A stretch of 64,000 nucleotides of DNA from IMG/VR virus record IMGVR_UViG_3300010885_025649, positions 62,001 through 126,000 of that record. The stretch is one strand, 5' to 3'. The notes beneath the pieces were generated by a model, which searched no databases, was not told where the DNA came from, and saw only the letters and a list, made by a program, of their open reading frames with translations. A program made the position numbers and the translations under genes. Positions 7,061 to 56,428 of the stretch are shown here, piece by piece (the stretch's first letter is position 1; each line of letters starts with the position of its first letter).

Positions 7061-8989
7061 TTAACTAACCTGTAGCTCATTATAAGCTTTAAATGTTAGT
7101 GGAAAGATAGGTTCAGCAAGTTGTTTAAATGCTATAGCATATTGACGAATCTCCCATTGTGCATCTTCAGATAAACGTAATCCTAAGAAATGTAATAAAG
7201 ATCTTAGATTAAAAGTGATATATAAACTTGTATAAGTGCAATGTGGTAAAACTCCTCTAGCTTGTTCTCTACACACACCATTAGCTAATAACTGCTCATA
7301 TATTTGATAAGCTTTATTAACTTGTTCTGCATATAATTCTCGTACTAACTCTTGATTAATATCCGGATTAGATACACTAGATTGTCTATTAGTTTTACCT
7401 TGCCCTCGAAACTCTTTAGGAATATAAGCTTGGTTCTTGACTACAATATATCTTGCACTTTCCTGATTAAATGAGTTATGAACCACAATTCCATTAGCTA
7501 CAAAATTATGCCAAGGCTTTGTAACACACAAATCATAAGTATCTTGTTCTCCCATATATTCAATAGCAGTAACTTTAACGGGATGAGCTTTAAGTTTCTG
7601 GCCTATACGTTTATTTACTCGCACTCTAAATAAAACAGGTTTATTCAAAGCTTGTTCTGCAAAAGCAATTTCATTTGCTTGAGATTTATGAACTTCCATA
7701 TGACAAGATTTACAAAGAGTAATAAGATTATCAATGTCATAAGCTTTAGTTATATCAGCAGCAACTGGAATTATATGATGTGCATGAAGTATACTAGAAC
7801 CTTGTCCGCATTGTTGACAAGTATAATCATACTTTTCATGAACGACTTTAGCATTTAGTCTAGTCCATGCACCAATATTAGCCCGTTCAGTCGTAATACC
7901 CCCACGCCAGAAATTGTTCTTCTCGCCTACCTTTTGTTTAGCTCTAATTGATCTAACTTGGCGAGCTTCTGGAGTTAAGTTAATCTTATAACCAGTCTTA
8001 CCTTTATTCCAAGGAGTCTGATTTAGGAAGAGTTTATCTATTTCTTGTTTAGAGAATTTTAGATCATGTATCTTAAGCCATTTCCTAATAGTATGATAAC
8101 TACACTCTGCCTCTGACGCCATTTGTGCAACAGAATATCCATCTTGTCTACATTTCTGCATCCAATCATAATCTCTATATAATCCGCTACCAACAACAAC
8201 ATTACCATTAACCATAAAATAAGAATCTTTAGTCATAAGTACTTCATCATTTATTACTTGTACTCCAAGGGCATGTCCCATAGTTTGCCAACCTTCTGAA
8301 GTATAAACTTTATGATTAGTAGTCATAGTTAAAGTTTTATTATCTTCTAATGTAACTTTATATACTGGCTGTATACCTTGATAAACTACATCTTCAACAT
8401 GACCAGTTGTAAATAAACCAGTACTTTCATCTAAAACCCGCAGCCGCATATTACTAATTCGTTTCTGCTTACTACGAAATCCTGCAGGTAATTTACTATT
8501 ACATACTCTTTGTACTGTGGCCCAACCCACCCCAGTTTTATTAGCTATTTGTCTATAGTTAATATTAGCTGCAGCCATTTCTTTAATTTGGTCTACAACT
8601 ATTTGTGGAGTAGTTAATGGATGTTTTTCTCCAATATGCCAATCTTCATATAATTCTTTAATTGTTTTATTTAAAGATTTAGAAGTTACACCAGTATTAT
8701 TAACAAATGTAACTATAGTATCACCAGTAACACAACAACCAATACGATGTCTTAACATCTCTTGAACTACATATAATGGAGCGGTAGCTCTAAAGGTTAA
8801 TAGATTGTGTTCCACAGGGCTAAAATGTTTGTTCTTAAGTAAATATTTAATTAATTTATAATTATCTTCTTGTGATCTAACTTTAAGATCATTAGCTAAA
8901 GAAACTCTAGCTGCGGCGCAAATCATCGCATCATCACCGACATGCTGAATTAATTCAACATGACTAATATTATCTAATAAAGGATCCAT
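7061..8989 (-). CDS. thyX: FAD-dependent thymidylate synthase ThyX, intein-interrupted
   Basis: AAARVS, HFSPVEH and the signature RHRIGC|…|SFNQESARY; C-terminal REQARGVLP and NLRSLLHFLGLR…AQWEIR. Confidence 0.95.
   Translation of the reverse strand: MDPLLDNISHVELIQHVGDDAMICAAARVSLANDLKVRSQEDNYKLIKYLLKNKHFSPVEHNLLTFRATAPLYVVQEMLRHRIGCCVTGDTIVTFVNNTGVTSKSLNKTIKELYEDWHIGEKHPLTTPQIVVDQIKEMAAANINYRQIANKTGVGWATVQRVCNSKLPAGFRSKQKRISNMRLRVLDESTGLFTTGHVEDVVYQGIQPVYKVTLEDNKTLTMTTNHKVYTSEGWQTMGHALGVQVINDEVLMTKDSYFMVNGNVVVGSGLYRDYDWMQKCRQDGYSVAQMASEAECSYHTIRKWLKIHDLKFSKQEIDKLFLNQTPWNKGKTGYKINLTPEARQVRSIRAKQKVGEKNNFWRGGITTERANIGAWTRLNAKVVHEKYDYTCQQCGQGSSILHAHHIIPVAADITKAYDIDNLITLCKSCHMEVHKSQANEIAFAEQALNKPVLFRVRVNKRIGQKLKAHPVKVTAIEYMGEQDTYDLCVTKPWHNFVANGIVVHNSFNQESARYIVVKNQAYIPKEFRGQGKTNRQSSVSNPDINQELVRELYAEQVNKAYQIYEQLLANGVCREQARGVLPHCTYTSLYITFNLRSLLHFLGLRLSEDAQWEIRQYAIAFKQLAEPIFPLTFKAYNELQVS
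7475..8734 (-). mobile_element. Intein (420 aa) with HNH homing endonuclease
   Basis: Begins CVTGDT, block B LTMTTNHKVYT, ends YDL…HNFVANGIVVHN with +1 Ser. Central CQQCG…HAHHIIP…NLITLCKSCH plus PWNKGK motif and HTH-like segments. Confidence 0.92.
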
Positions 8990-22254: not shown

Positions 22255-22422
22255 GATTCAACTCCTGAGGGGTGACATGAAACGAAGATTGTTTACCAAT
22301 CTTCCAATAGGACTGGTTGGGAACGGGCCAACATCTTTCCCATTATCAGTAGAAAGCTTTACGTTAAGCTACAGTCCCAAGTATTTGAACTACTAACCAC
22401 AATCCTACCTAACACATACCAA

Positions 22423-23732: not shown

Positions 23733-23821
23733 TGGGAGTGTAGGGAATCGAACCCTAACACGGGGCCAGTCCAGCCCACTTGAGGATATAAATCTCACGA
23801 TGCTCCATACATCACACTCCC
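23733..23821 (-). tRNA. Class II (Leu-like body) tRNA with UAU anticodon, nested in the outer tRNA
   Basis: GGGAGTG/CACTCCC-A73, loop TTTATAT, about 22-nt V-arm, T-arm TAGGG-TTCGATT-CCCTA; one A-C mismatch at the stem base. Confidence 0.7.
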
Positions 23822-26961: not shown

Positions 26962-28197
26962 TTAAACTCCTTGCTGTTGTTTTAACTGTTGCACTCGGTT
27001 ACATAACCAAGCATAGGCTTCAGCTTGATTAGTAATATAACCTTCAAGTACTAACTCATGTACTTCATCAATTATCTTCTTATAAATAGGCCCAGGAATA
27101 ACACCTCGCACTTGTAAATCCCGGCCTTGAATAAGATAAGGTAATTTATTATCTAGCACACCTGCTTTTTGTGCAAATTGCAAACAAGCATGAAGAGTAA
27201 TACCAGTAATAGCAAAATAGAAATCACATAAGATTCTTATATTAATAGACTTTAATTTGTGAGCTAATTGCCTAACCTTACTAATAGTGTCACAATCTTC
27301 AATAGCTTTATAGTAAAGGTATAATTCCAATGCAGGTTCTTCAATACGCCCGGTATTACAACTAAGAGTATTAAGTCTCCGGCTACCATAATAAGTATGA
27401 ACAACAACTGCAACCATAAATGCATGTTCATGTGCAGTTTTAGAAGCAACTTGTTTAGCCCGCTGTAAAATTATAGCCGGCTCATCTTCATACTTACCCT
27501 CAAACCAATACTTAAACCAGCCTACATCAGATAAGAACTTTAGGCCAAGCTCAGGATGATCACCTTTAACAAGCAACTTCTGGAACTCACCGCCAATTCT
27601 CTCCATAGAAAGGTCATTAGGGTTTAAGGATTTACACATCTCGATAGTAGCTGGATCTACAATCTGCAGATTAAAGCGAGAGATAAATTGCGCTCCGCGC
27701 AGAACCCGCAAGGGATCTTCTGCAAAAGCCGGTCCTACATGGCGTAGAATACCAGCTCGTAAATCTGCTCTACCATTATAAGGATCTAGGAATTCCCCAG
27801 TCACAAGATTAAGACCAATGGCATTAATAGTAAAGTCTCTTCTGGATGCACCTTCAGCAAAGGTCATGTTAGAATCGCCTTGAATAACAAAGCTGCGATG
27901 TTTATCACCAACTTTAGATTCACGACGAGGGAGAGAAACCTCAAGATCATTAACACTATATACTTGGAACTGTGCCCCTAATAGTTTAGGCTCCGAAGCT
28001 TTTACAGTCTCAGCATACCGATATAGTATATGATGTAGCTTCTCCGCTTCAATTCCATATACTTCAATATCTAAATCTTTAGGAGTAATACCCAAAAGCA
28101 TATCTCTAACAAAGCCACCAACTGCATAGACTTTAGCAGTGGGAACAAAGTTAATGACAAACTGAGCAAAGTTGTGGCCTTTCTGTATTAGTTCCAT
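26962..28197 (-). CDS. tRNA nucleotidyltransferase (CCA-adding enzyme, class II)
   Basis: VGGFVRDMLLG…DLDIEV, SRRDFTINAI, DPYNGRADL, FAEDPLRVLRGAQF, GRDL. Confidence 0.92.
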   Translation of the reverse strand: MELIQKGHNFAQFVINFVPTAKVYAVGGFVRDMLLGITPKDLDIEVYGIEAEKLHHILYRYAETVKASEPKLLGAQFQVYSVNDLEVSLPRRESKVGDKHRSFVIQGDSNMTFAEGASRRDFTINAIGLNLVTGEFLDPYNGRADLRAGILRHVGPAFAEDPLRVLRGAQFISRFNLQIVDPATIEMCKSLNPNDLSMERIGGEFQKLLVKGDHPELGLKFLSDVGWFKYWFEGKYEDEPAIILQRAKQVASKTAHEHAFMVAVVVHTYYGSRRLNTLSCNTGRIEEPALELYLYYKAIEDCDTISKVRQLAHKLKSINIRILCDFYFAITGITLHACLQFAQKAGVLDNKLPYLIQGRDLQVRGVIPGPIYKKIIDEVHELVLEGYITNQAEAYAWLCNRVQQLKQQQGV

Positions 28198-30325: not shown

Positions 30326-30976
30326 TCAAGTTAATAATGCTTCTAGCAATTCCGGATCAATAGGTAATCTTCTAAGATTAGGAACTAGTAATTCATTCAT
30401 CCAATGTGCATGAGTGGTAACATGATTAGCGCGGACATATTTACCCACACTAGTACTAAACTCATCCATAAAGAAAGCTTCTCTTAATCTAACTACATAA
30501 CCTTCACATAAATCTCCATTAACTATATGTAGCGGCTGGAAAGAATTATCCCATATACCTTCATAAAGAACAGGTACAGTAGGCAATCCAAAGTAATTAC
30601 ACCAAGTAACTACATCATCCCAACTTAAACATTCATCATCTTCCCAAATATTAAATACTTGGAAATACGCTATTAAGTTCTTGTAATAAATACTATGTTT
30701 AGCATATAGATTCTCCCCACAAATCCGCATATTTGTGGGGATATCAAAGGAGAATAAACTATGTAATCTACTTACAAAGGTTCTACTTTTATGATAGGGA
30801 GAATCTATAGATCTAGCATGTAAACCATTAGTATACATAGTAGTATTCTCCCCATCCATCTTCGCAGTAATAACTACTTCTTTACCTTCAAAGGGATTAA
30901 AGGTTAATCTTTTATCATCTGAAGTAGCCCCTGGAGAATCGGGTAAATGTAATGTACGAGGATATTTAGTGGCCAT
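30326..30976 (-). CDS. ATP-dependent RNA ligase (Rnl2-like)
   Basis: KYPRTLHLP.SPG.TSDDK, KMDGENTT, ICGENLYAKHSI, EGYVVR, KYVR; start MATKYP at 30976. Confidence 0.85.
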   Translation of the reverse strand: MATKYPRTLHLPDSPGATSDDKRLTFNPFEGKEVVITAKMDGENTTMYTNGLHARSIDSPYHKSRTFVSRLHSLFSFDIPTNMRICGENLYAKHSIYYKNLIAYFQVFNIWEDDECLSWDDVVTWCNYFGLPTVPVLYEGIWDNSFQPLHIVNGDLCEGYVVRLREAFFMDEFSTSVGKYVRANHVTTHAHWMNELLVPNLRRLPIDPELLEALLT

Positions 30977-31055
30977 ATTTACTTTAGCTCTGATAAGTTT
31001 ACTTATATAATCTAGTAAGTTAAACATAAGAATTATACGAGGCTTTTGTCAAGTG

Positions 31056-31437: not shown

Positions 31438-32740
31438 TGGGTCTAAAGCCCCGTCCCTTTAGGGCGGCTTTTTATCCTCGTTCGTGCTATCATAAGAACA
31501 GGAGGAAACAATGATTGTCTTTGAGTTCAAAACCTACGGCAAAGCAAGCCAATTCACTGCGATTGATGAGGCTATCCGAACGATGCAATTCATTCGGAAC
31601 AAGTCTATTCGTTTGTGGATGGACGGCCAAGCTAAATCTTGGGTAGAACTCTCCCGTCATTGTGCCCTGCTTGCTAAAGAGTTTGAGTTTGCCAACAAGC
31701 TCAACTCTATGGCTAGACAAGCTGCTGCCGAACGCGCATGGGCTAGTATCTCCCGATTCTACGACAACTGTAAAAGCAAAGTACCCGGTAAGAAAGGGTA
31801 CCCTACTTTTCAGAAAGACTGTAGAAGTGTTGAGTACAAAACCTCTGGTTGGAAGCTATCAGAAGACCGGAAAAGAATAACCTTCACCGACAAGATTGGC
31901 ATTGGTTGTTTGAAGTTAAAAGGCACCCGTGACTTAAACTTCTACGCCCCAGAGCAAATCAAAAGGGTGCGGTTAGTCAAACGTGCGGACGGATACTACG
32001 CGCAGTTCTGTGTCTCAGTAGATAGGTCTGAAGAACTAGAGCCAACAGGAAGTGCAGTTGGTTTGGATGTAGGGCTTAAAGAGTTCTACACCGACTCCAA
32101 TAACCAAACTGTTGATAACCCTCGCTTTCTAAGGACTGGTGAGAAAGCTATAAAGCAGACTCAGCGCAGAGTATCTAAGAAAGTAAAAGGCTCAAATAAT
32201 CGACACAAGGCCAAGAAGACACTAGGCAAACGCCACCTTAAGGTAAGTAGGCAACGCAGGGACTTTGCAATCAAGACTGCAAGGTGCGTAATCAGGTCAA
32301 ACGACCTAGTAGCTTATGAAGACTTAAGGATTAAGAACATGGTGAAGAACCATTGTTTGGCTAAGTCAATAAACGATGCCTCTTGGTACATGTTCCGTCA
32401 GTGGTTGGAGTACTTCGGCAAGATATTTGGCAAGGTAACAATAGCAGTACCAGCAGCCAGAACAAGTCAAGAATGCTCAAACTGTGGGGCTATTGTTGTC
32501 AAGTCATTATCCACTAGGACTCACGCTTGTAAGTGCGGGTGCGTGTTGGATAGAGACCACAACGCAGCGATTAACATTTTGATGAGAGGATTGGGTACCG
32601 CAGGGCATGTGGGAACCTTTGCGCTAGACGCAAGAATCGCTTGGGGAGACACGACCTCTACTCTGGTTGGAGCAATCCTGCCCGTGCAAGCCGTCTCGTA
32701 GAACCAAGAATCCCCGCACCTTTAGGTCGGGGAGTGTCAA
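31438..32740 (+). mobile_element. IS200/IS605-family (IS1341-type, TnpB-only) element
   Basis: Left hairpin AAAGCCCCGTCCCTTTAGGGCGGCTTT; right hairpin CCCCGCACCTTTAGGTCGGGG ending GTGTCAA; no tnpA; higher GC. Left boundary +/-3 nt. Confidence 0.85.
31511..32701 (+). CDS. tnpB: RNA-guided endonuclease TnpB
   Basis: RuvC-I GLDVGLKEF, RuvC-II AYEDL, Zn finger CSNCG…CKCG, RuvC-III DRDHNAAIN. Confidence 0.95.
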   Translation: MIVFEFKTYGKASQFTAIDEAIRTMQFIRNKSIRLWMDGQAKSWVELSRHCALLAKEFEFANKLNSMARQAAAERAWASISRFYDNCKSKVPGKKGYPTFQKDCRSVEYKTSGWKLSEDRKRITFTDKIGIGCLKLKGTRDLNFYAPEQIKRVRLVKRADGYYAQFCVSVDRSEELEPTGSAVGLDVGLKEFYTDSNNQTVDNPRFLRTGEKAIKQTQRRVSKKVKGSNNRHKAKKTLGKRHLKVSRQRRDFAIKTARCVIRSNDLVAYEDLRIKNMVKNHCLAKSINDASWYMFRQWLEYFGKIFGKVTIAVPAARTSQECSNCGAIVVKSLSTRTHACKCGCVLDRDHNAAINILMRGLGTAGHVGTFALDARIAWGDTTSTLVGAILPVQAVS

Positions 32741-34266: not shown

Positions 34267-34317
34267 TTACGCAGCTACAAGAGCGCGCTTACGAGAGAAA
34301 GGATAAATGTTATTGAC
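34267..34317 (-). other. tmRNA tag reading frame (A)VNNIYPFSRKRALVAA*
   Basis: Direct translation; resembles cyanobacterial ANNIV.F.R..AA tags. Confidence 0.9.
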
Positions 34318-34417
34318 CTTTATTTTGTTTGTGTTTCTTCGCTTACACTGCGTTCAGTGGTACTCTTTCCCAATCATGTCGAAACCTGTATATCCCCGAG
34401 TAGTGGAGATAAGGGGA

Positions 34418-34698
34418 CACGTTACCCCCAGTTTTCACTGAGGCGTGGACTATTCCTTCAACCAAATGCGTGTCTTTGGTTGCCAAGCATTTAAAGCATT
34501 ACTGCTTTCCTAGTCACACTTAAAGTTAGACAAAGCTAATCACGCTCGAAGTGCTCTATGAGTCTCTAGACCATCGTTACCATCACTGGTAGTTTTGGTA
34601 CGGTGTTAACATGTCTGGTTACCCAGATTTAGTCTTCGCCGTTTGAGCTTGGTTTACATTCAACCATTACTGATTGAAGCGACTAACTCTTTCGAGTA
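34418..34698 (-). ncRNA. Group I intron (281 nt, ORF-less) in the tmRNA T-loop
   Basis: Exon …TTCGAU| with P1 U-G pair; P3 GCTC/GAGC; R GAGACT; S GAAGGAATAGTCC; P9 GAAA hairpin; terminal G then TCCCCT. Confidence 0.9.
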
Positions 34699-34871
34699 AT
34701 CGAACCCCTGTCCAGTCATAGTACTCAGTACCACCTAGTCCTCTTCTTAATAAGATCTGTTGAGAACAGTTAGACCCACCGTTATAAGGCCACGGACACG
34801 GGCGCCGAAGATTAAACTATCAGGGCCAGGACGAACCTTGGCCCAACAGCTACAAAGCCTTTGCTTTGTAT

Positions 34872-52770: not shown

Positions 52771-52846
52771 TGGAACATATGAGAATCGAACTCATCTGAA
52801 ATTCTGATTGCAAGTCAGACGACCACTCCTAGCAGTCCCATGCCCC
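52771..52846 (-). tRNA. tRNA-Ala(TGC)
   Basis: G3-U70; TCTGA-CTTGCAA-TCAGA; A73. Confidence 0.88.
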
Positions 52847-52863
52847 AAAGTTAAATTAATCTA

Positions 52864-52949
52864 CGGGGAGCTGGTAGAATCGAACTCCAAGCGCTTCCGC
52901 GCTCCATCCGCTTTCAAGGCGGTGCAGATCCCAGATCTGATAACTCCCC
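52864..52949 (-). tRNA. tRNA-Ser(TGA) with long D-stem and bulged T-stem
   Basis: GGGGAGT/GCTCCCC-G73; D-stem CAGATC/GATCTG; ACCGC-CTTGAAA-GCGG; V-arm. Confidence 0.8.
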
Positions 52950-52958
52950 AATCACCAA

Positions 52959-53047
52959 AGGAAAGCCTGGGATTCGAACCCAGGGGAGCCTCTCGGCCCC
53001 GACACTTTAGTAGAATGTTGCAATCGGCCATGCTCTGCCAGCTTTCC
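52959..53047 (-). tRNA. tRNA-Ser-type body with ACT anticodon
   Basis: GGAAAGC/GCTTTCC; ACATT-CTACTAA-AGTGT; long V-arm. Confidence 0.8.
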
Positions 53048-53330
53048 CTATACTTTTATTATAACATATCTTTACAGCGCTGTTGAATCTCAGAATCTAA
53101 AAGAATTTAATTCTTCCTGACTAACACCTATCAACTCTTGTTCAATTAATAAACTTAATTTATTCATAAGACCTCCTAAGGTTTGATCTCTTGTAAGTAT
53201 TGAACAGCACGCATAATAGTACAACCTAATATAGCTTTTAATTGTATAGCCGCTTCTAAAACATTCATTGATCACCTATAGTTTGTGTAATTGGAGAGCG
53301 GTGTACTTTGGTAGGTGAGCCGCTTTCCTT

Positions 53331-53375
53331 TACCTCTTTATTATACCAAGAGTCTCTTGGTATAATAAAGAGGTA
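53331..53375. repeat. Perfect 22-bp inverted repeat containing two divergent TATAAT boxes
   Basis: TACCTCTTTATTATACCAAGAG-T-CTCTTGGTATAATAAAGAGGTA. Confidence 0.9.
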
Positions 53376-53394: not shown

Positions 53395-54657
53395 GTGCGT
53401 CTTACTCACCAGTACCGAATTAAGCCCTCACCAGAACAGGAAGCCTTGATGCTTCACTGGCTAGAGCTTTTACGTCAGCACTGGAATTATGCACTAGGTC
53501 AGCGTTTGGACTACCTACGTCGTACCCGTAGCCCGATTGACCGTTGTTCCTTGCGTAGTTGCCCGATTGGTGAGATTCCGGAACGACCCAACTACTACAC
53601 TCAGGCTAGAGACCTAAAGCAAACCAAGGCTCTATTCCCCGAGTACAAGGATATTTACCTAGAGGTGCAGCAACAGAACCTCATCCGCTTGGATAAGGCT
53701 TGGGATAGGTGGACTAAACCTGATGCCACAGGGAAGAGAGCAGGACGACCCCAGTTCAAGAAAACTGATGAGCTTCGTTCTTTTACTTTCCCCCGTGTGA
53801 ACTGCCCTAAAGCCGGGGTGCATCTCTTAGGTGAGGTGATAAAGTTCTCTAAAATCGGTGTGATGCCCGTTATCCTGCATCGTCCGATTCCTGAAGGGTT
53901 TGTCATCAAGACCGCTACGGTGGTTCACAAAGTAGACGGTTGGTTTGTTTCTCTGAGCCTGGAAGATACGAGCATCCCCGCTCCAATGCCCTGTGAGGAG
54001 GTCAAGACAGCAGTAGGTGTGGATGTTGGGCTAAAGGAGTTCCTTACTACTTCTGAGGGTGATGCAGTTGCGATACAGCACATCTACCGCAAGGCTCAGA
54101 AGCGTTTAGCCCGTCAGCAGCGCAAGTTAGCCCGTCAACAAAAGGGGAGCAAGAATGCAGTAAAGCAGAAGAAACGGGTAGCCCTGGTACATCAACGCAT
54201 CCAAAGACAGCGTGAGAACTTCCACTACAACACGGCGCATGACTTGTGCAGCAAGTACGACTTGATAGCGGTGGAAGACCTGAACATCAAGGGTTTGGCT
54301 AGAACCCGGCTAGCTAAGTCAATCCTAGATGCAGCTTGGGGAGCGTTCCTACAAAAACTAGAAGCAGTGGCGGTAAAACGCGGCAAGCTAGTCATAAAAG
54401 TCAATCCTTGGGGAACAAGTCAGGATTGCTCGGAGTGTGGGACAAAGGTTCCTAAGACCCTCAGCATCCGTACTCATGAATGTCCGAAGTGTGGGCTAGA
54501 GTTAGACCGGGATGTGAATGCAGCTCGGAATATCCTAGAACGTGCGCTATGCACCGTGGGACTCACGGTGTCAGCCTGTGGAGGCTTAGGGGTTGCCCAG
54601 CCAATGAAGCAGGAAGTCTCTCTAGTGATAGGGAGAAGCCCCCGCCAGACCCGTTAG
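53395..54657 (+). CDS. tnpB: RNA-guided endonuclease TnpB
   Basis: HTH_OrfB start YRIKPSPEQ; GVDVGLK; AVEDL; CSECG…CPKCG; DRDVNAARN. Confidence 0.95.
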   Translation: MRLTHQYRIKPSPEQEALMLHWLELLRQHWNYALGQRLDYLRRTRSPIDRCSLRSCPIGEIPERPNYYTQARDLKQTKALFPEYKDIYLEVQQQNLIRLDKAWDRWTKPDATGKRAGRPQFKKTDELRSFTFPRVNCPKAGVHLLGEVIKFSKIGVMPVILHRPIPEGFVIKTATVVHKVDGWFVSLSLEDTSIPAPMPCEEVKTAVGVDVGLKEFLTTSEGDAVAIQHIYRKAQKRLARQQRKLARQQKGSKNAVKQKKRVALVHQRIQRQRENFHYNTAHDLCSKYDLIAVEDLNIKGLARTRLAKSILDAAWGAFLQKLEAVAVKRGKLVIKVNPWGTSQDCSECGTKVPKTLSIRTHECPKCGLELDRDVNAARNILERALCTVGLTVSACGGLGVAQPMKQEVSLVIGRSPRQTR

Positions 54658-55000: not shown

Positions 55001-55074
55001 GGCGGTTGAAAGGAGTCGAACCTATACACCCCCTGTGCTATATACAGGTGCTCTACCACTGAGCTACAACCGCC
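55001..55074 (-). tRNA. His-type tRNA body with non-His anticodon loop (ATATAGC)
   Basis: G-1 GCGGTTG/CAACCGC C73; CCTGT/ACAGG stem intact. Confidence 0.7.
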
Positions 55075-55091
55075 ATGAATTAAACTAAAAG

Positions 55092-55164
55092 GGTGACATG
55101 AAAGGAATCGAACCAATATCTCCCGCGGATCATGCGGACGCACTACCTTTGTGCTACAGTCACC
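55092..55164 (-). tRNA. His-type tRNA-like gene with loop ATGATCC
   Basis: GGTGAC…GTCAC-C; D-stem GCAC/GTGC; TCCGC/GCGGG; imperfect T-stem. Confidence 0.55.
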
Positions 55165-55208
55165 ATGACTTTAACTAAACGTATCTCTCCTTGTTGTGAA
55201 TGTGTAAG

Positions 55209-55282
55209 GGTGTTTGGTGGGATTCGAACCCACGCCTCTCGCAAATCGGAAGCGAACGCTCTGCCGCTGAGCTACTAACACC
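55209..55282 (-). tRNA. His-type tRNA-like gene with 9-nt loop TTCCGATTT
   Basis: G-1 GTGTTAG/CAAACAC C73; intact D- and T-arms. Confidence 0.6.
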
Positions 55283-55453
55283 AAGATTTGGGGCGCGCCA
55301 TGAAAAGAAGAAACCGCTAAGTCCCAAGGTTGTAACCTAGCGGATGGAGCAAAAGCTTAACGTTTAAAACAGTCGTAAGGAGACTTATCAGTCTTTAAAT
55401 ATCCGGGAGGTCTATATCTAACTGTCACTTGCATTTAAATTCTCAATTAATAA

Positions 55454-55510
55454 CAGCCCCAACCGGATTTGAACCGGTGATCTCTCGCGTGACAGGCGAT
55501 CGCTTTAACC
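55454..55510 (-). pseudogene. tRNA-Asp(GTC) lacking 5' acceptor strand
   Basis: TCGC-CTGTCAC-GCGA, ACCGG-TTCAAAT-CCGGT, TGGGGCT-G73; the D-loop GGTTAA is the stop of ORF 55505-55699. Confidence 0.75.
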
Positions 55511-55699
55511 TACGCATTGTCTAATAACAATATCATCCGAATCTAATTCAACTACAATGCGATCTTGTAAGAAATCACAAGTAAGTGGAGTATATTCTTG
55601 TACAGTTATTCCCAATTCTTTACACAATTCTTTGGCATTAATCCAAGGTAACCCAATTAGATTAGGTAGCTTGATTGTATTATCATATTCATCAAACAT
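55505..55699 (-). CDS. Small protein, potato-inhibitor I/I78-like fold possible
   Basis: PNLIGL…AKE…T.DF..DRIVVELD..DIV pattern. Confidence 0.45.
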   Translation of the reverse strand: MFDEYDNTIKLPNLIGLPWINAKELCKELGITVQEYTPLTCDFLQDRIVVELDSDDIVIRQCVG

Positions 55700-55901
55700 A
55701 AGTTTCCCCGGTAATACTTTGTAGTAATTCTATTTCAGCTTGTGCAGTATAATTTGCACCGGCGCGTAATAAATGAACTTGCTTAGCTAATCCTGTAGAG
55801 ATATTTAATTCAGTAGCTATTTCTAAAATCCTAGCATCAATATCCTCTAATAAGAAATTAGGAATATCTACTGCAGGAATTCCTGGAGGTTTAAATAACA
55901 T
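55692..55901 (-). CDS. Small helical protein, paralog of 14555-14776
   Basis: EIATELNI…LLRAGANYTAQAEI aligns with QIAEELQI…YFRKSKHYSYAAEK. Confidence 0.5.
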   Translation of the reverse strand: MLFKPPGIPAVDIPNFLLEDIDARILEIATELNISTGLAKQVHLLRAGANYTAQAEIELLQSITGETYV

Positions 55902-56428
55902 TACAGTAAATCACTCAGATCTGTTAGTCTATAATCATCTAGATCAGTAGCTTCTTTATTCCACGGCTGATCCATCAGGTAAGCATAATGTCCATTCATA
56001 AGGAATACCCGAATGGTTTCTGGTTTATCATCCACAAATACATCAAAGTTATTTGCGAAGAGAACCTTATCATTACTATTCTTAACAGTAATTACAGGCG
56101 CATTTGCCTGAATATTAAAGATATCTAACCATTGTCTACTAATCTCACTGCTAATAGGACGGTGAGTAATAAACATAGTTACAGGTAATAAGTTAATCAG
56201 ATTAGGATCTACTAATGCTGGGGCTTGTAACCACAATTCAGGATTATCATTCAAAGCTTTCCAGATATCTTTAAATTTCGGAACTGTATCCATAAATCGC
56301 CAGCTATTAACTTCTTTACCTTTAGGAAAATGTGTATAGCCAAAATAAGTCTCAGCTATTTGAGCACACAAAGCATTCCAATCTACTACAACACCATCTA
56401 AATCTAAACCAATGCGATTAAACTTCAT
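55901..56428 (-). CDS. 5'(3')-deoxyribonucleotidase (HAD, NT5C-like)
   Basis: GLDLDGVVVD, ITHR, FVDDKP, PWN. Confidence 0.85.
   Translation of the reverse strand: MKFNRIGLDLDGVVVDWNALCAQIAETYFGYTHFPKGKEVNSWRFMDTVPKFKDIWKALNDNPELWLQAPALVDPNLINLLPVTMFITHRPISSEISRQWLDIFNIQANAPVITVKNSNDKVLFANNFDVFVDDKPETIRVFLMNGHYAYLMDQPWNKEATDLDDYRLTDLSDLL

What the first reader, a model, noticed from the sequence alone, without database searches (positions are those of the whole stretch)
55001..55282. Tandem trio of tRNAs with His identity ends but scrambled anticodon loops
Seen: three consecutive, mutually divergent tRNA genes have G-1 and C73-type ends with His-like acceptors (GGCGGTTG, GGTGACTG, GGTGTTAG) and paired D- and anticodon stems. 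Their loops are ATATAGC, ATGATCC and TTCCGATTT, none with GTG. Two share a mismatched T-stem (…CCTTT). Established: G-1:C73 is the main HisRS determinant, and T-stem pairs tune EF-Tu binding. Inference: stems retained while loops diverge suggests chargeable non-decoding tRNAs. They could be decoys for tRNA-targeting toxins, or His donors for a non-ribosomal reaction. Parallel pseudogenisation remains possible.
Basis: partly seen in the sequence, partly recalled or inferred. Interest (0 to 1): 0.75.

Follow-up and report, generated by a model that had tools for sequence, protein, structure and literature searches.

The report
Phage tRNAs: histidine ends, non-histidine anticodons
A large freshwater cyanophage carries three adjacent, well-folded tRNA genes whose ends carry the histidine-charging mark but whose anticodons are for other amino acids; this mismatch is rare and non-random, but its function cannot be determined from sequence.

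Summary
Three tRNA genes lie in tandem on the minus strand: tA 55001-55074, tB 55092-55164, tC 55209-55282. Each encodes G at -1 opposite C73, and none has a GUG anticodon.

This G-1/C73 pair is absent from the phage's other 12-13 tRNA-like genes and from 123 tRNAs of five unrelated phages. In a Planktothrix genome only tRNA-His has it.

The genes have not decayed uniformly. Each keeps 20-21 of 22 base pairs and all universal core residues. They differ from one another by 6-7 compensatory double changes per pair (neutral simulation P<=8e-5).

- Only the ends are histidine-like. With the loop masked, tRNA-His ranks 15th-20th of 31 host-type tRNAs.
- The loops are not simply scrambled. tA has a canonical loop (anticodon AUA, matching UAU, 83% of Tyr codons). 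tC's core and anticodon arm match cyanobacterial tRNA-Arg(CCG), with CCG kept in a 9-nt loop. tB is eroding.

Nearby are a truncated tRNA-Asp-like relic, a 5' stub of a tA-like unit and a TnpB insertion.

Best reading: identity-mismatched tRNAs arising in a fast-changing cyanophage tRNA island. No diverged relative or RNA data exist, so function is open.

The parts
55001..55074 (-). tA: 74-nt tRNA gene including encoded G-1 (55074) and C73 (55001). The 7-nt loop is AUAUAGC (U33, anticodon AUA, G37). The T stem AUAGG/CCUUU has a U50.U64 mismatch. The acceptor is GCGGUUG/CAACCGC.
   Evidence: Rfam 56.8 bits; ARAGORN; 21 of 22 pairs intact; cloverleaf 3.3 kcal/mol above MFE, typical for phage tRNAs.
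55092..55164 (-). tB: 73-nt tRNA-like gene with G-1 (55164) and C73 (55092). The loop is AUGAUCC (anticodon GAU, C37). It has two U.U mismatches in the T stem and a bulged U in the acceptor 3' strand. It is probably an eroding copy.
   Evidence: Rfam 33.9 bits; not called by ARAGORN; fold z-score -0.36.
55209..55282 (-). tC: 74-nt tRNA gene with G-1 (55282) and C73 (55209). The 9-nt loop UUCCGAUUU contains U33-C34-C35-G36-A37. There is an A6.A67 mismatch. The core is tRNA-Arg(CCG)-like, while the acceptor top G-1/G1-U2-G3...C70-A71-C72/C73 is His-type.
   Evidence: Rfam 53.9 bits; core 49/60 identical to cyanobacterial tRNA-Arg(CCG) against 6/14 in the acceptor.
55073..55089 (-). Conserved spacer motif TTTAGTTTAATTCATGG that leads into tA. 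Together with the copy before tB it marks tA and tB as tandem duplicates.
   Evidence: The motif is found without mismatch only at these two places in the window; 14 of 16 spacer bases are shared.
55163..55179 (-). Second copy of the spacer motif (TTTAGTTAAAGTCATGG), leading into tB.
55290..55306 (-). Stub TTCATGGCGCGCCCC. It has the same TTCATG-G-GCG start as the tA unit and then breaks off, so it is probably the remnant of a fourth unit.
   Evidence: Read directly from the sequence. This is an inference.
55462..55515 (-). tRNA-Asp(GUC)-like relic covering model positions 10-63 only. The 5' acceptor strand is missing and is overlapped by the stop codon of ORF 55505-55699.
   Evidence: Rfam 30.9 bits, partial match; fold z-score +1.0.
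53395..54657 (+). TnpB (IS605 OrfB / Cas12f-like) gene. It is inserted between the trio and the Ser/Ser/Ala tRNA cluster.
   Evidence: PHROG 506 E=3e-103; Pfam PF07282, PF01385 and PF12323. All 35 closest relatives are cyanobacterial.
52771..53048 (-). Neighbouring tRNA cluster of the same island: Ala(UGC), a type-II Ser(UGA) that hits the tRNA-Sec model, and Ser(ACU).
26962..28197 (-). Phage CCA-adding enzyme (tRNA nucleotidyltransferase). It is relevant because none of the phage tRNA genes encodes CCA.
   Evidence: PHROG 2244 E=5e-56; 3' trailers listed.
30326..31027 (-). Rnl2-type RNA ligase inside the tRNA island, a candidate tRNA-repair function.
   Evidence: PF09414 at 97 bits.

Best explanation
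The trio is a small, locally duplicated family of real tRNA genes in the tRNA island of a freshwater cyanophage. Each gene combines a histidine-type acceptor end with an anticodon arm that is not histidine-type. The end consists of an encoded G-1 paired with C73; tB and tC also have a G1-U2-G3 acceptor top.

The three anticodon arms differ:
- tA carries AUA.
- tB carries GAU.
- tC carries CCG, in an arm like that of tRNA-Arg(CCG) but widened to 9 nt.

Shown here: the genes fold as tRNAs, the structure has been maintained by selection, the end signature is specific, and the array has been turning over by duplication, truncation and IS insertion.

Inferred from established tRNA biology:
- Bacterial RNase P would leave G-1 on because it pairs with C73.
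- The phage's CCA-adding enzyme would complete the 3' end.
- Host HisRS would accept the products, less efficiently than true tRNA-His because the anticodon is a secondary determinant.
- G-1 and C73 would hinder recognition by the synthetases that match the anticodons.

The products would then be natural identity-mismatched tRNAs. tA and tC look maintained, and tB looks like a decaying copy. I think it most likely that they are kept at low translational activity. The weakened T stems of tA and tB and the widened loop of tC point that way. They would then act through binding, to HisRS or to tRNA-targeting or tRNA-modifying factors, rather than as bulk decoders. That last step is conjecture.
For: - Real tRNAs: Rfam 56.8, 33.9 and 53.9 bits. 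All universal core residues are kept.
- Cloverleaf energy gaps of 2.0-3.4 kcal/mol are like those of 136 ordinary phage tRNAs.
- Structure under selection: 20-21 of 22 pairs are kept despite 32-39% stem-base divergence, with 6-7 compensatory double changes per pair. A neutral simulation gives a mean of 11-12 pairs kept, P<=8e-5.
- End signature is specific: 0 of 12-13 other tRNAs in this phage, 0 of 123 in other phages, and only tRNA-His in Planktothrix.
- A G1-U2-G3 acceptor top is seen only in tRNA-His genes of the panel.
- The other phage tRNAs have discriminators that fit the host rule for their anticodon (11 of 12: U73 for Gly, Cys and Thr; C1:G72 plus A73 for Pro; G3:U70 for Ala; G73 for Ser(UGA)). 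The trio scores 0 of 3.
- tC core matches tRNA-Arg(CCG).
- tA and tB are duplicates.
- Cyanobacterial host.
- tRNA maintenance genes are present: a CCA-adding enzyme and an RNA ligase.
- G-1:C73 is sufficient for HisRS recognition (PMC9976931). A tRNA-His-derived tRNA with an enlarged non-GUG loop is histidylated once G-1 is present (PMC3113583).
Against: - There is no expression, processing or charging evidence. Only DNA runs hold the locus.
- No diverged relative exists in any collection searched, so conservation of the trio across phages is unknown.
- The paralog comparison shows past selection for structure, not necessarily present function.
- The three bodies are about as different from each other (64-69% identity) as from unrelated tRNAs. 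Apart from the tA/tB spacer, common descent is therefore not demonstrated.
- tB looks degraded, and the surroundings hold tRNA relics and an IS element, which fits a gene graveyard.
- His insertion at the phage's own abundant UAU codons would be harmful.
- No partner protein was found.
Confidence: 0.45

Rival explanations
1. The trio is a non-functional by-product of array turnover. Duplication, recombination between neighbouring tRNA genes and mutation in a fast-changing tRNA island produced odd copies that are no longer used. Their good folds only reflect recent origin from working tRNAs.
For: - tB is visibly eroded.
- A 5'-truncated tRNA-Asp-like relic and a 5' stub lie next to the trio.
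- TnpB elements have inserted twice in the island.
- The non-canonical features would impair decoding: Y37 in tB, the 9-nt loop in tC, and A34 with G37 next to A36 in tA.
- No conservation data exist.
Against: - tA and tC score third and fifth best of all tRNA genes in this phage.
- Uniform decay is rejected by the paralog comparison.
- A single-crossover chimera would mismatch the two acceptor strands, but all three acceptors are paired and all three carry both G-1 and C73. That needs either selection or an unlikely run of coincidences.
- The signature is absent from 123 control phage tRNAs.
Confidence: 0.3
2. They are ordinary decoders, charged with the amino acid that fits the anticodon: tA reads UAU (Tyr), tB reads AUY (Ile) and tC reads CGG (Arg). 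On this view the G-1:C73 pair is only a processing quirk.
For: - tA's AUA matches UAU, which is 83% of Tyr codons.
- The phage also has tRNA-Ser(ACU), which matches its top Ser codon AGU. A34 tRNAs for U-ending codons may therefore be a theme.
- tC keeps an Arg(CCG)-like anticodon arm.
Against: - The acceptor and core determinants for those amino acids are missing (identity sets as listed in PMC9976931; host forms).
- tA has C73 instead of A73, and a short variable arm where the host tRNA-Tyr has a long one.
- tB has C73 instead of A73, and C37.
- tC lacks A20 and has C73.
- The rest of the phage's tRNAs do obey these rules (11 of 12), so the rules matter in this system.
Confidence: 0.1
3. They are tRNA-like processing signals. 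The folds serve only as RNase P and RNase Z cleavage sites that cut a long minus-strand transcript between the flanking genes, so the anticodon loop is free to drift.
For: - No promoter or terminator stands out around the trio.
- Genes abut both sides, and a ribosome-binding site plus start codon follow tA within 30 nt.
- The acceptor, T arm and D/T-loop elbow, which these nucleases read, are the best conserved parts.
Against: - Anticodon stems are also fully conserved with compensatory changes, which processing does not require.
- It does not explain why all three carry G-1:C73.
- Three signals in a row are redundant.
Confidence: 0.1

Closest known systems
Bacterial tRNA-His (G-1:C73, anticodon GUG)
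   Same: Both have an encoded extra G at -1 paired with C73. tB and tC have the G1-U2-G3...C70-A71-C72 acceptor top, which in the control panel is seen only in tRNA-His. tA has the G1-C2-G3 top of Planktothrix tRNA-His.
   Different: The trio has no GUG anticodon. With the loop masked, the body is no closer to tRNA-His than to other isotypes. tC's core is tRNA-Arg(CCG)-like.
Yeast mitochondrial tRNA-Thr1(UAG), recruited from a duplicated tRNA-His gene (PMC3113583)
   Same: That case also involves duplication, a remodelled and enlarged anticodon loop, and a mismatch between ancestry and anticodon. Biochemistry there shows that G-1 alone decides whether HisRS charges such a tRNA.
   Different: In yeast, G-1 was lost, a co-evolved ThrRS took over and a codon was reassigned. 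Here G-1:C73 is kept, no dedicated synthetase is found, and long ORFs read normally under the standard code.
Phage tRNAs with anticodon-loop changes that escape host anticodon nucleases (PMC10264068, PMC11464382, PMC11555353)
   Same: These are also phage tRNA islands with unusual anticodon loops. This phage additionally carries an RNA ligase and a CCA-adding enzyme, which suggests tRNA damage is an issue for it.
   Different: Those tRNAs keep the anticodon and the matching identity, so they can replace the cleaved host tRNA. The trio's anticodon and acceptor identity disagree.
Aminoacylatable tRNA-like structures of plant RNA viruses (reviewed in PMC9976931)
   Same: They are viral, carry an N-1:N73 pair that makes them HisRS substrates, and do not take part in decoding.
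   Different: Those are 3'-terminal pseudoknotted elements of RNA genomes. The trio are free-standing cloverleaf genes in a DNA phage.
tRNAs with expanded anticodon loops (frameshift suppressors; 8-nt-loop tRNAs reported in cluster M mycobacteriophages, Pope et al. 2014, from my own knowledge)
   Same: tC has a 9-nt loop when the canonical 5-bp stem is drawn.
   Different: The known cases have 8-nt loops and a matching identity. ARAGORN can also draw tC with a U.U closing pair and a 7-nt loop that lacks U33. No frameshift site was sought.

Membership tests
tRNA (Rfam RF00005) | Score at or above the curated gathering score of 29 bits | tested here: met
   56.8, 33.9 and 53.9 bits.
tRNA (Rfam RF00005) | Cloverleaf with 7/4/5/5-bp stems and the universal residues U8, A14, G18-G19, A21, T54-T55-C56, A58 | tested here: met
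   All universal residues are present in all three. 21, 20 and 21 of 22 pairs are intact; tB has a bulge and two U.U pairs.
Bacterial tRNA-His | Extra G at -1, genome-encoded, opposite C73 | tested here: met
   Present in 3 of 3 trio genes. Absent from the phage's other tRNAs and from 123 control phage tRNAs. Present only in tRNA-His of Planktothrix.
Bacterial tRNA-His | Anticodon GUG | tested here: not met
   The anticodons are AUA, GAU, and CCG or CGA within a 9-nt loop.
Bacterial tRNA-His | Body sequence closest to tRNA-His among isotypes | tested here: not met
   With the loop masked, tRNA-His ranks 15-20 of 31 host-type tRNAs and 4-100 of 103 tRNAs from other phages.
Bacterial tRNA-His | Aminoacylated by HisRS; G-1 retained after RNase P cleavage | not testable with these tools
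   This needs in vitro charging and cleavage mapping.
tRNA pseudogene | Disrupted stems, lost universal residues, or a low covariance-model score compared with functional tRNAs of the same genome | tested here: inconclusive
   Not met for tA and tC, which rank third and fifth of the phage's tRNA matches. Partly met for tB: 33.9 bits, fold z-score -0.36, a bulge and two U.U pairs.
Cyanobacterial tRNA-Arg(CCG) (for tC) | Anticodon C34-C35-G36 in an Arg-type anticodon arm | tested here: met
   Stem 9 of 10 identical, CCG follows U33, and the core is 49/60 identical.
Cyanobacterial tRNA-Arg(CCG) (for tC) | A20 in the D loop, A/G73 and a 7-nt loop | tested here: not met
   The D loop is AGCGG-CA against AGCGGATA. 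tC has C73 and a 9-nt loop.
Phage replacement tRNAs that evade anticodon nucleases | Same anticodon and amino-acid identity as the targeted host tRNA, with changes elsewhere in the loop | tested here: not met
   Anticodon and acceptor identity disagree in all three.
Expanded-loop (frameshift-suppressor-type) tRNA (for tC) | Anticodon loop of more than 7 nt | tested here: inconclusive
   The loop is 9 nt with the canonical stem. ARAGORN draws a U.U closing pair, and the MFE prefers a shifted hairpin.

The most novel reading that the evidence does not exclude
The phage deliberately maintains identity-swapped tRNAs: Tyr-, Ile- and Arg-type anticodon arms fitted with histidine acceptor ends. After charging by host HisRS, or after binding it unproductively, they could act in one of two ways. 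They could be decoys or sponges for host factors that read either end of a tRNA, such as synthetases, tRNA-cleaving defence nucleases or modification enzymes. Or they could be low-level His mis-inserters at chosen codons. Either way this would be a natural, virus-encoded use of tRNA identity mismatch.
Probability: 0.2. Interest if true: 0.85.

Novelty: new variant of a known kind. Interest (0 to 1): 0.55.

Why it matters
Natural tRNAs whose charging identity conflicts with their anticodon are rare. Known cases led to codon reassignment in yeast mitochondria or to regulated mistranslation. I know of no earlier report of a virus carrying three such genes in a row, all with the one end signature that is sufficient for HisRS.

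If they are made and charged, this would be a new way for a phage to interfere with, or shield itself from, the host translation and tRNA-defence machinery. It would also supply ready-made test substrates for asking how far G-1:C73 overrides the anticodon in cyanobacterial HisRS.

If they are inert, the locus is still a clear snapshot of birth-and-death evolution in a phage tRNA island.

Tried and rejected
**Searches for diverged relatives (all failed)**
- IMG/VR was scanned with the 175-aa neighbour, NAMPT, the CCA-adding enzyme, RIIA, the terminase and the 145-aa island gene. These gave only a 100%-identical second assembly or unrelated phages.
- The 5.8-billion-protein search with both flanking genes found only the query itself.
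- megablast and blastn against cultured phages found nothing specific.
- Distant cyanophage relatives (Ma-LMM01 type, 29% terminase identity) carry only canonical tRNA-Tyr(GUA) and tRNA-Met.

**Loop hypervariability**
- Contigs from three freshwater runs show no variants in the trio.
- A metagenome scan with tC's stems fixed and its loop left free returned only the same phage.
- This is no evidence either way.

**Origin from a host tRNA**
- BLAST against 5 and then 401 cyanobacterial genomes gave an isotype-specific answer only for tC (Arg CCG; Gly CCC is second).
- tA hits Gly(GCC), Thr(GGU) and Arg(ACG) about equally.
- tB gave no match at E<=1e-4 in the combined-trio search and was not searched on its own.

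**Partner enzymes**
- No HisRS core, HGTP anticodon-binding domain, cyclodipeptide synthase, FemAB or L/F-transferase was found.

**Other ideas rejected**
- Promoter or terminator signals: none stand out.
- Alternative genetic code: rejected, because very long ORFs read through under table 11.
- Plus-strand reading of the region: rejected, because all tRNA models match the minus strand.
- HisRS-tRNA complex prediction: not run, because its shuffled-RNA controls could not separate His-specific docking from general tRNA-likeness.

Full report
**What is there**

The window is part of a 212,497-bp IMG/VR virus record (36.7% G+C, about 91% complete), and all of that record's tRNA genes lie inside the window on the minus strand.

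At the reported place, Rfam's tRNA model matches three times: 55001-55073 (56.8 bits), 55093-55162 (33.9 bits) and 55209-55281 (53.9 bits), all above the gathering score of 29. ARAGORN calls the first and third. I call them tA, tB and tC.

Read 5'->3' on the minus strand:
- Each gene has a G immediately before position 1, opposite a C at discriminator position 73, followed by C-T-T.
- The anticodon loops are AUAUAGC, AUGAUCC and UUCCGAUUU.
- tA and tB share the T-stem strand CCUUU, with one and two U.U mismatches respectively.

**Is it more than chance?**

- G-1 with C73 occurs in none of the phage's other 12-13 tRNA-like genes.
- It occurs in none of 123 tRNAs from five unrelated phage tRNA arrays: Caulobacter CcrBL9, Ralstonia RsoM2USA, Mycobacterium Colt, Raoultella Ro1 and an IMG/VR phage.
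- Among 40 distinct tRNAs of Planktothrix sp. PCC 11201, only tRNA-His(GUG) has it.
- A G1-U2-G3 acceptor top, shared by tB and tC, occurs in the panel only in tRNA-His genes.
- T-stem mismatches occur in 6 of 123 control tRNAs.
- The sequence is identical in two JGI assemblies and one Logan assembly, so it is not an assembly error.

**The phage and its host**

- All 35 closest relatives of the adjacent TnpB gene are cyanobacterial, at 60-71% identity.
- The terminase is closest to freshwater cyanophages of the Ma-LMM01/MaMV group and to a Microcoleus phage.
- The samples are freshwater metagenomes.

A cyanobacterial host is therefore likely, and Planktothrix shows that such hosts use the standard G-1:C73 rule.

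The phage's other tRNAs fit host identity rules for their anticodons in 11 of 12 cases:
- U73 for Gly, Cys and Thr.
- C1:G72 plus A73 for Pro.
- G3:U70 for Ala.
- G73 for Ser(UGA).
- A73 for Ile, Val, Leu and Met.

The trio fits in 0 of 3 cases. The island also encodes a CCA-adding enzyme and an Rnl2-type RNA ligase. None of the tRNA genes encodes CCA.

**Decay or constraint?**

No diverged relative could be found by any route, so I compared the three genes with each other.
- Each keeps 20-21 of 22 base pairs, counting G-1:C73, and every universal core residue.
- They differ from one another at 14-17 of 44 stem bases, including 6-7 double changes per comparison, almost all of which keep pairing.
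- When one member is mutated at random to the same divergence, only 11-12 pairs survive on average. The observed value was reached in at most 8 of 100,000 trials.
- The energy gap between cloverleaf and minimum free energy (2.0-3.4 kcal/mol) equals that of ordinary phage tRNAs.

This shows selection for structure in the past; it cannot show present function. tB is the exception in quality, with a bulged U, two U.U pairs, a pyrimidine at position 37 and a fold no better than shuffles.

First, only the ends are histidine-like. With the anticodon loop masked, tRNA-His ranks 15th-20th of 31 class-I tRNAs of Planktothrix. The three genes are no more similar to each other (64-69% identity) than to unrelated tRNAs.

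Second, the loops are not simply scrambled:
- tA has a canonical 7-nt loop with U33 and a purine at 37. Its anticodon AUA pairs with UAU, which makes up 83% of the phage's Tyr codons.
- The phage also has tRNA-Ser(ACU), which matches its commonest Ser codon AGU.
- tC, from position 8 to the end of the T arm, is 81-83% identical to tRNA-Arg(CCG) of several cyanobacteria.
- In that comparison, 9 of 10 anticodon-stem bases are identical, C34-C35-G36 follows U33, the variable region matches, and the core is 49/60 identical.
- By contrast, tC's acceptor matches that tRNA in only 6 of 14 bases, its D loop lacks A20, and its loop is two bases longer. Gly(CCC) is the second-best match.
- tA resembles Gly(GCC), Thr(GGU) and Arg(ACG) about equally, at 72-76%.

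**History of the array**

- tA and tB are each preceded by the motif TTTAGTTnAAnTCATG-G, which is found nowhere else in the window without mismatch. They also share the U50.U64 mismatch, so they are tandem duplicates.
- Just upstream of tC is a stub, TTCATGGCG..., that starts like the tA unit and breaks off.
- Further upstream lies a tRNA-Asp(GUC)-like relic without its 5' acceptor strand.
- A TnpB element separates the trio from the Ser/Ser/Ala cluster, and a second TnpB sits next to tRNA-Met.

The island is being reshaped by duplication, truncation and insertion.

**How it most likely works**

Three facts are established:
- G-1 and C73 are the major bacterial His determinants and the anticodon is secondary. 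The pair confers His acceptance even on microhelices. Viral tRNA-like structures with N-1:N73 are HisRS substrates that do not decode (all from PMC9976931).
- A tRNA-His-derived tRNA with an enlarged, non-GUG loop is efficiently histidylated when G-1 is present (PMC3113583).
- From my own knowledge, bacterial RNase P leaves G-1 on when it pairs with C73.

From these I infer that the RNAs mature with an 8-bp acceptor, receive CCA from the phage enzyme, and are recognised by host HisRS rather than by the synthetases that fit their anticodons. I consider tA and tC maintained and tB decaying.

Whether they decode is open. The weakened T stems and the 9-nt loop argue for low activity on the ribosome. 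His insertion at the phage's own frequent UAU codons would be costly. I found no partner enzyme for it.

**Rivals**

1. Inert by-products of array turnover. The neighbouring relics and tB favour this. The paired acceptors, the triple G-1:C73 signature and the high scores of tA and tC argue against it.
2. Ordinary decoders charged according to the anticodon. The codon match favours this. The missing determinants argue against it.
3. tRNA-like processing signals. The tight gene packing and the lack of promoters favour this. The conserved anticodon stems and the unexplained end signature argue against it.

**Comparison and verdict**

The closest known things are:
- tRNA-His itself, which shares the ends only.
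- The yeast mitochondrial tRNA-Thr1 recruited from tRNA-His, which shares duplication plus loop remodelling but not the retained G-1.
- Phage tRNAs that evade anticodon nucleases, which keep anticodon and identity in agreement, unlike these.
- Aminoacylatable viral tRNA-like structures.

The trio is best filed as a new variant of a known kind: identity-mismatched tRNAs, here in a phage, in tandem and with histidine ends. The function is unproven and may be none.

Noticed in passing
window 53395-54657 (+), 31511-32701 (+); genome G000:C1:193580-194806 (+): Three TnpB (IS605 OrfB / Cas12f-like) genes are present in this phage. The two in the window each lie next to tRNA genes on the opposite strand. 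The closest relatives of the first are all cyanobacterial (60-71% identity). A 45-nt inverted repeat at 53331-53375 sits just upstream of it.
   Followed up: partly
window 34267-34733 (-): There is a borderline match to the permuted tmRNA model RF04321 (47.9 bits, gathering score 47). ARAGORN does not call a tmRNA there. A two-piece tmRNA would fit a cyanobacterial host.
   Followed up: no
window 23733-23821 (-): This 89-nt tRNA has a long variable arm (Leu/Ser/Tyr type) and A73, but its anticodon is UAU (Ile codon AUA, 27% of the phage's Ile codons). An A.C mismatch closes the anticodon stem. It is another possible mismatch between body and anticodon.
   Followed up: no
window 52958-53048 (-): tRNA-Ser(ACU) has the rare A34 and U73 instead of the host-type G73. 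It matches AGU, the phage's commonest Ser codon.
   Followed up: partly
window 52865-52949 (-): The hit to the tRNA-Sec model (47.9 bits) is really a long-arm tRNA with anticodon UGA (Ser) and G73. It is not a selenocysteine tRNA. ARAGORN misses it.
   Followed up: partly
window 22308-22378 (-): tRNA-Ile(GAU) lacks the usual GG in the D loop and has CCCGTTC in place of the TTCRANY T loop. Several tRNAs of this phage are strongly non-canonical.
   Followed up: no
L032:19229-19302 (Mycobacterium phage Colt) and L034:12577-12648 (IMG/VR phage G004): The bona fide tRNA-His(GTG) genes of these two unrelated phages have C73 but T at -1, so they do not encode G-1.
   Followed up: no
window 7061-8989 (-): A thymidylate-synthase-like ORF of 642 aa has an HNH endonuclease segment in its middle. 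This may be an intein or a homing-endonuclease insertion.
   Followed up: no
window 55901-56428 (-): The 175-aa gene just upstream of the tRNA cluster is a HAD/NT5C-like phosphatase with a weak polynucleotide-kinase family hit. It could belong with the RNA ligase to a tRNA-repair set. It has no homologues beyond this phage at useful identity.
   Followed up: partly
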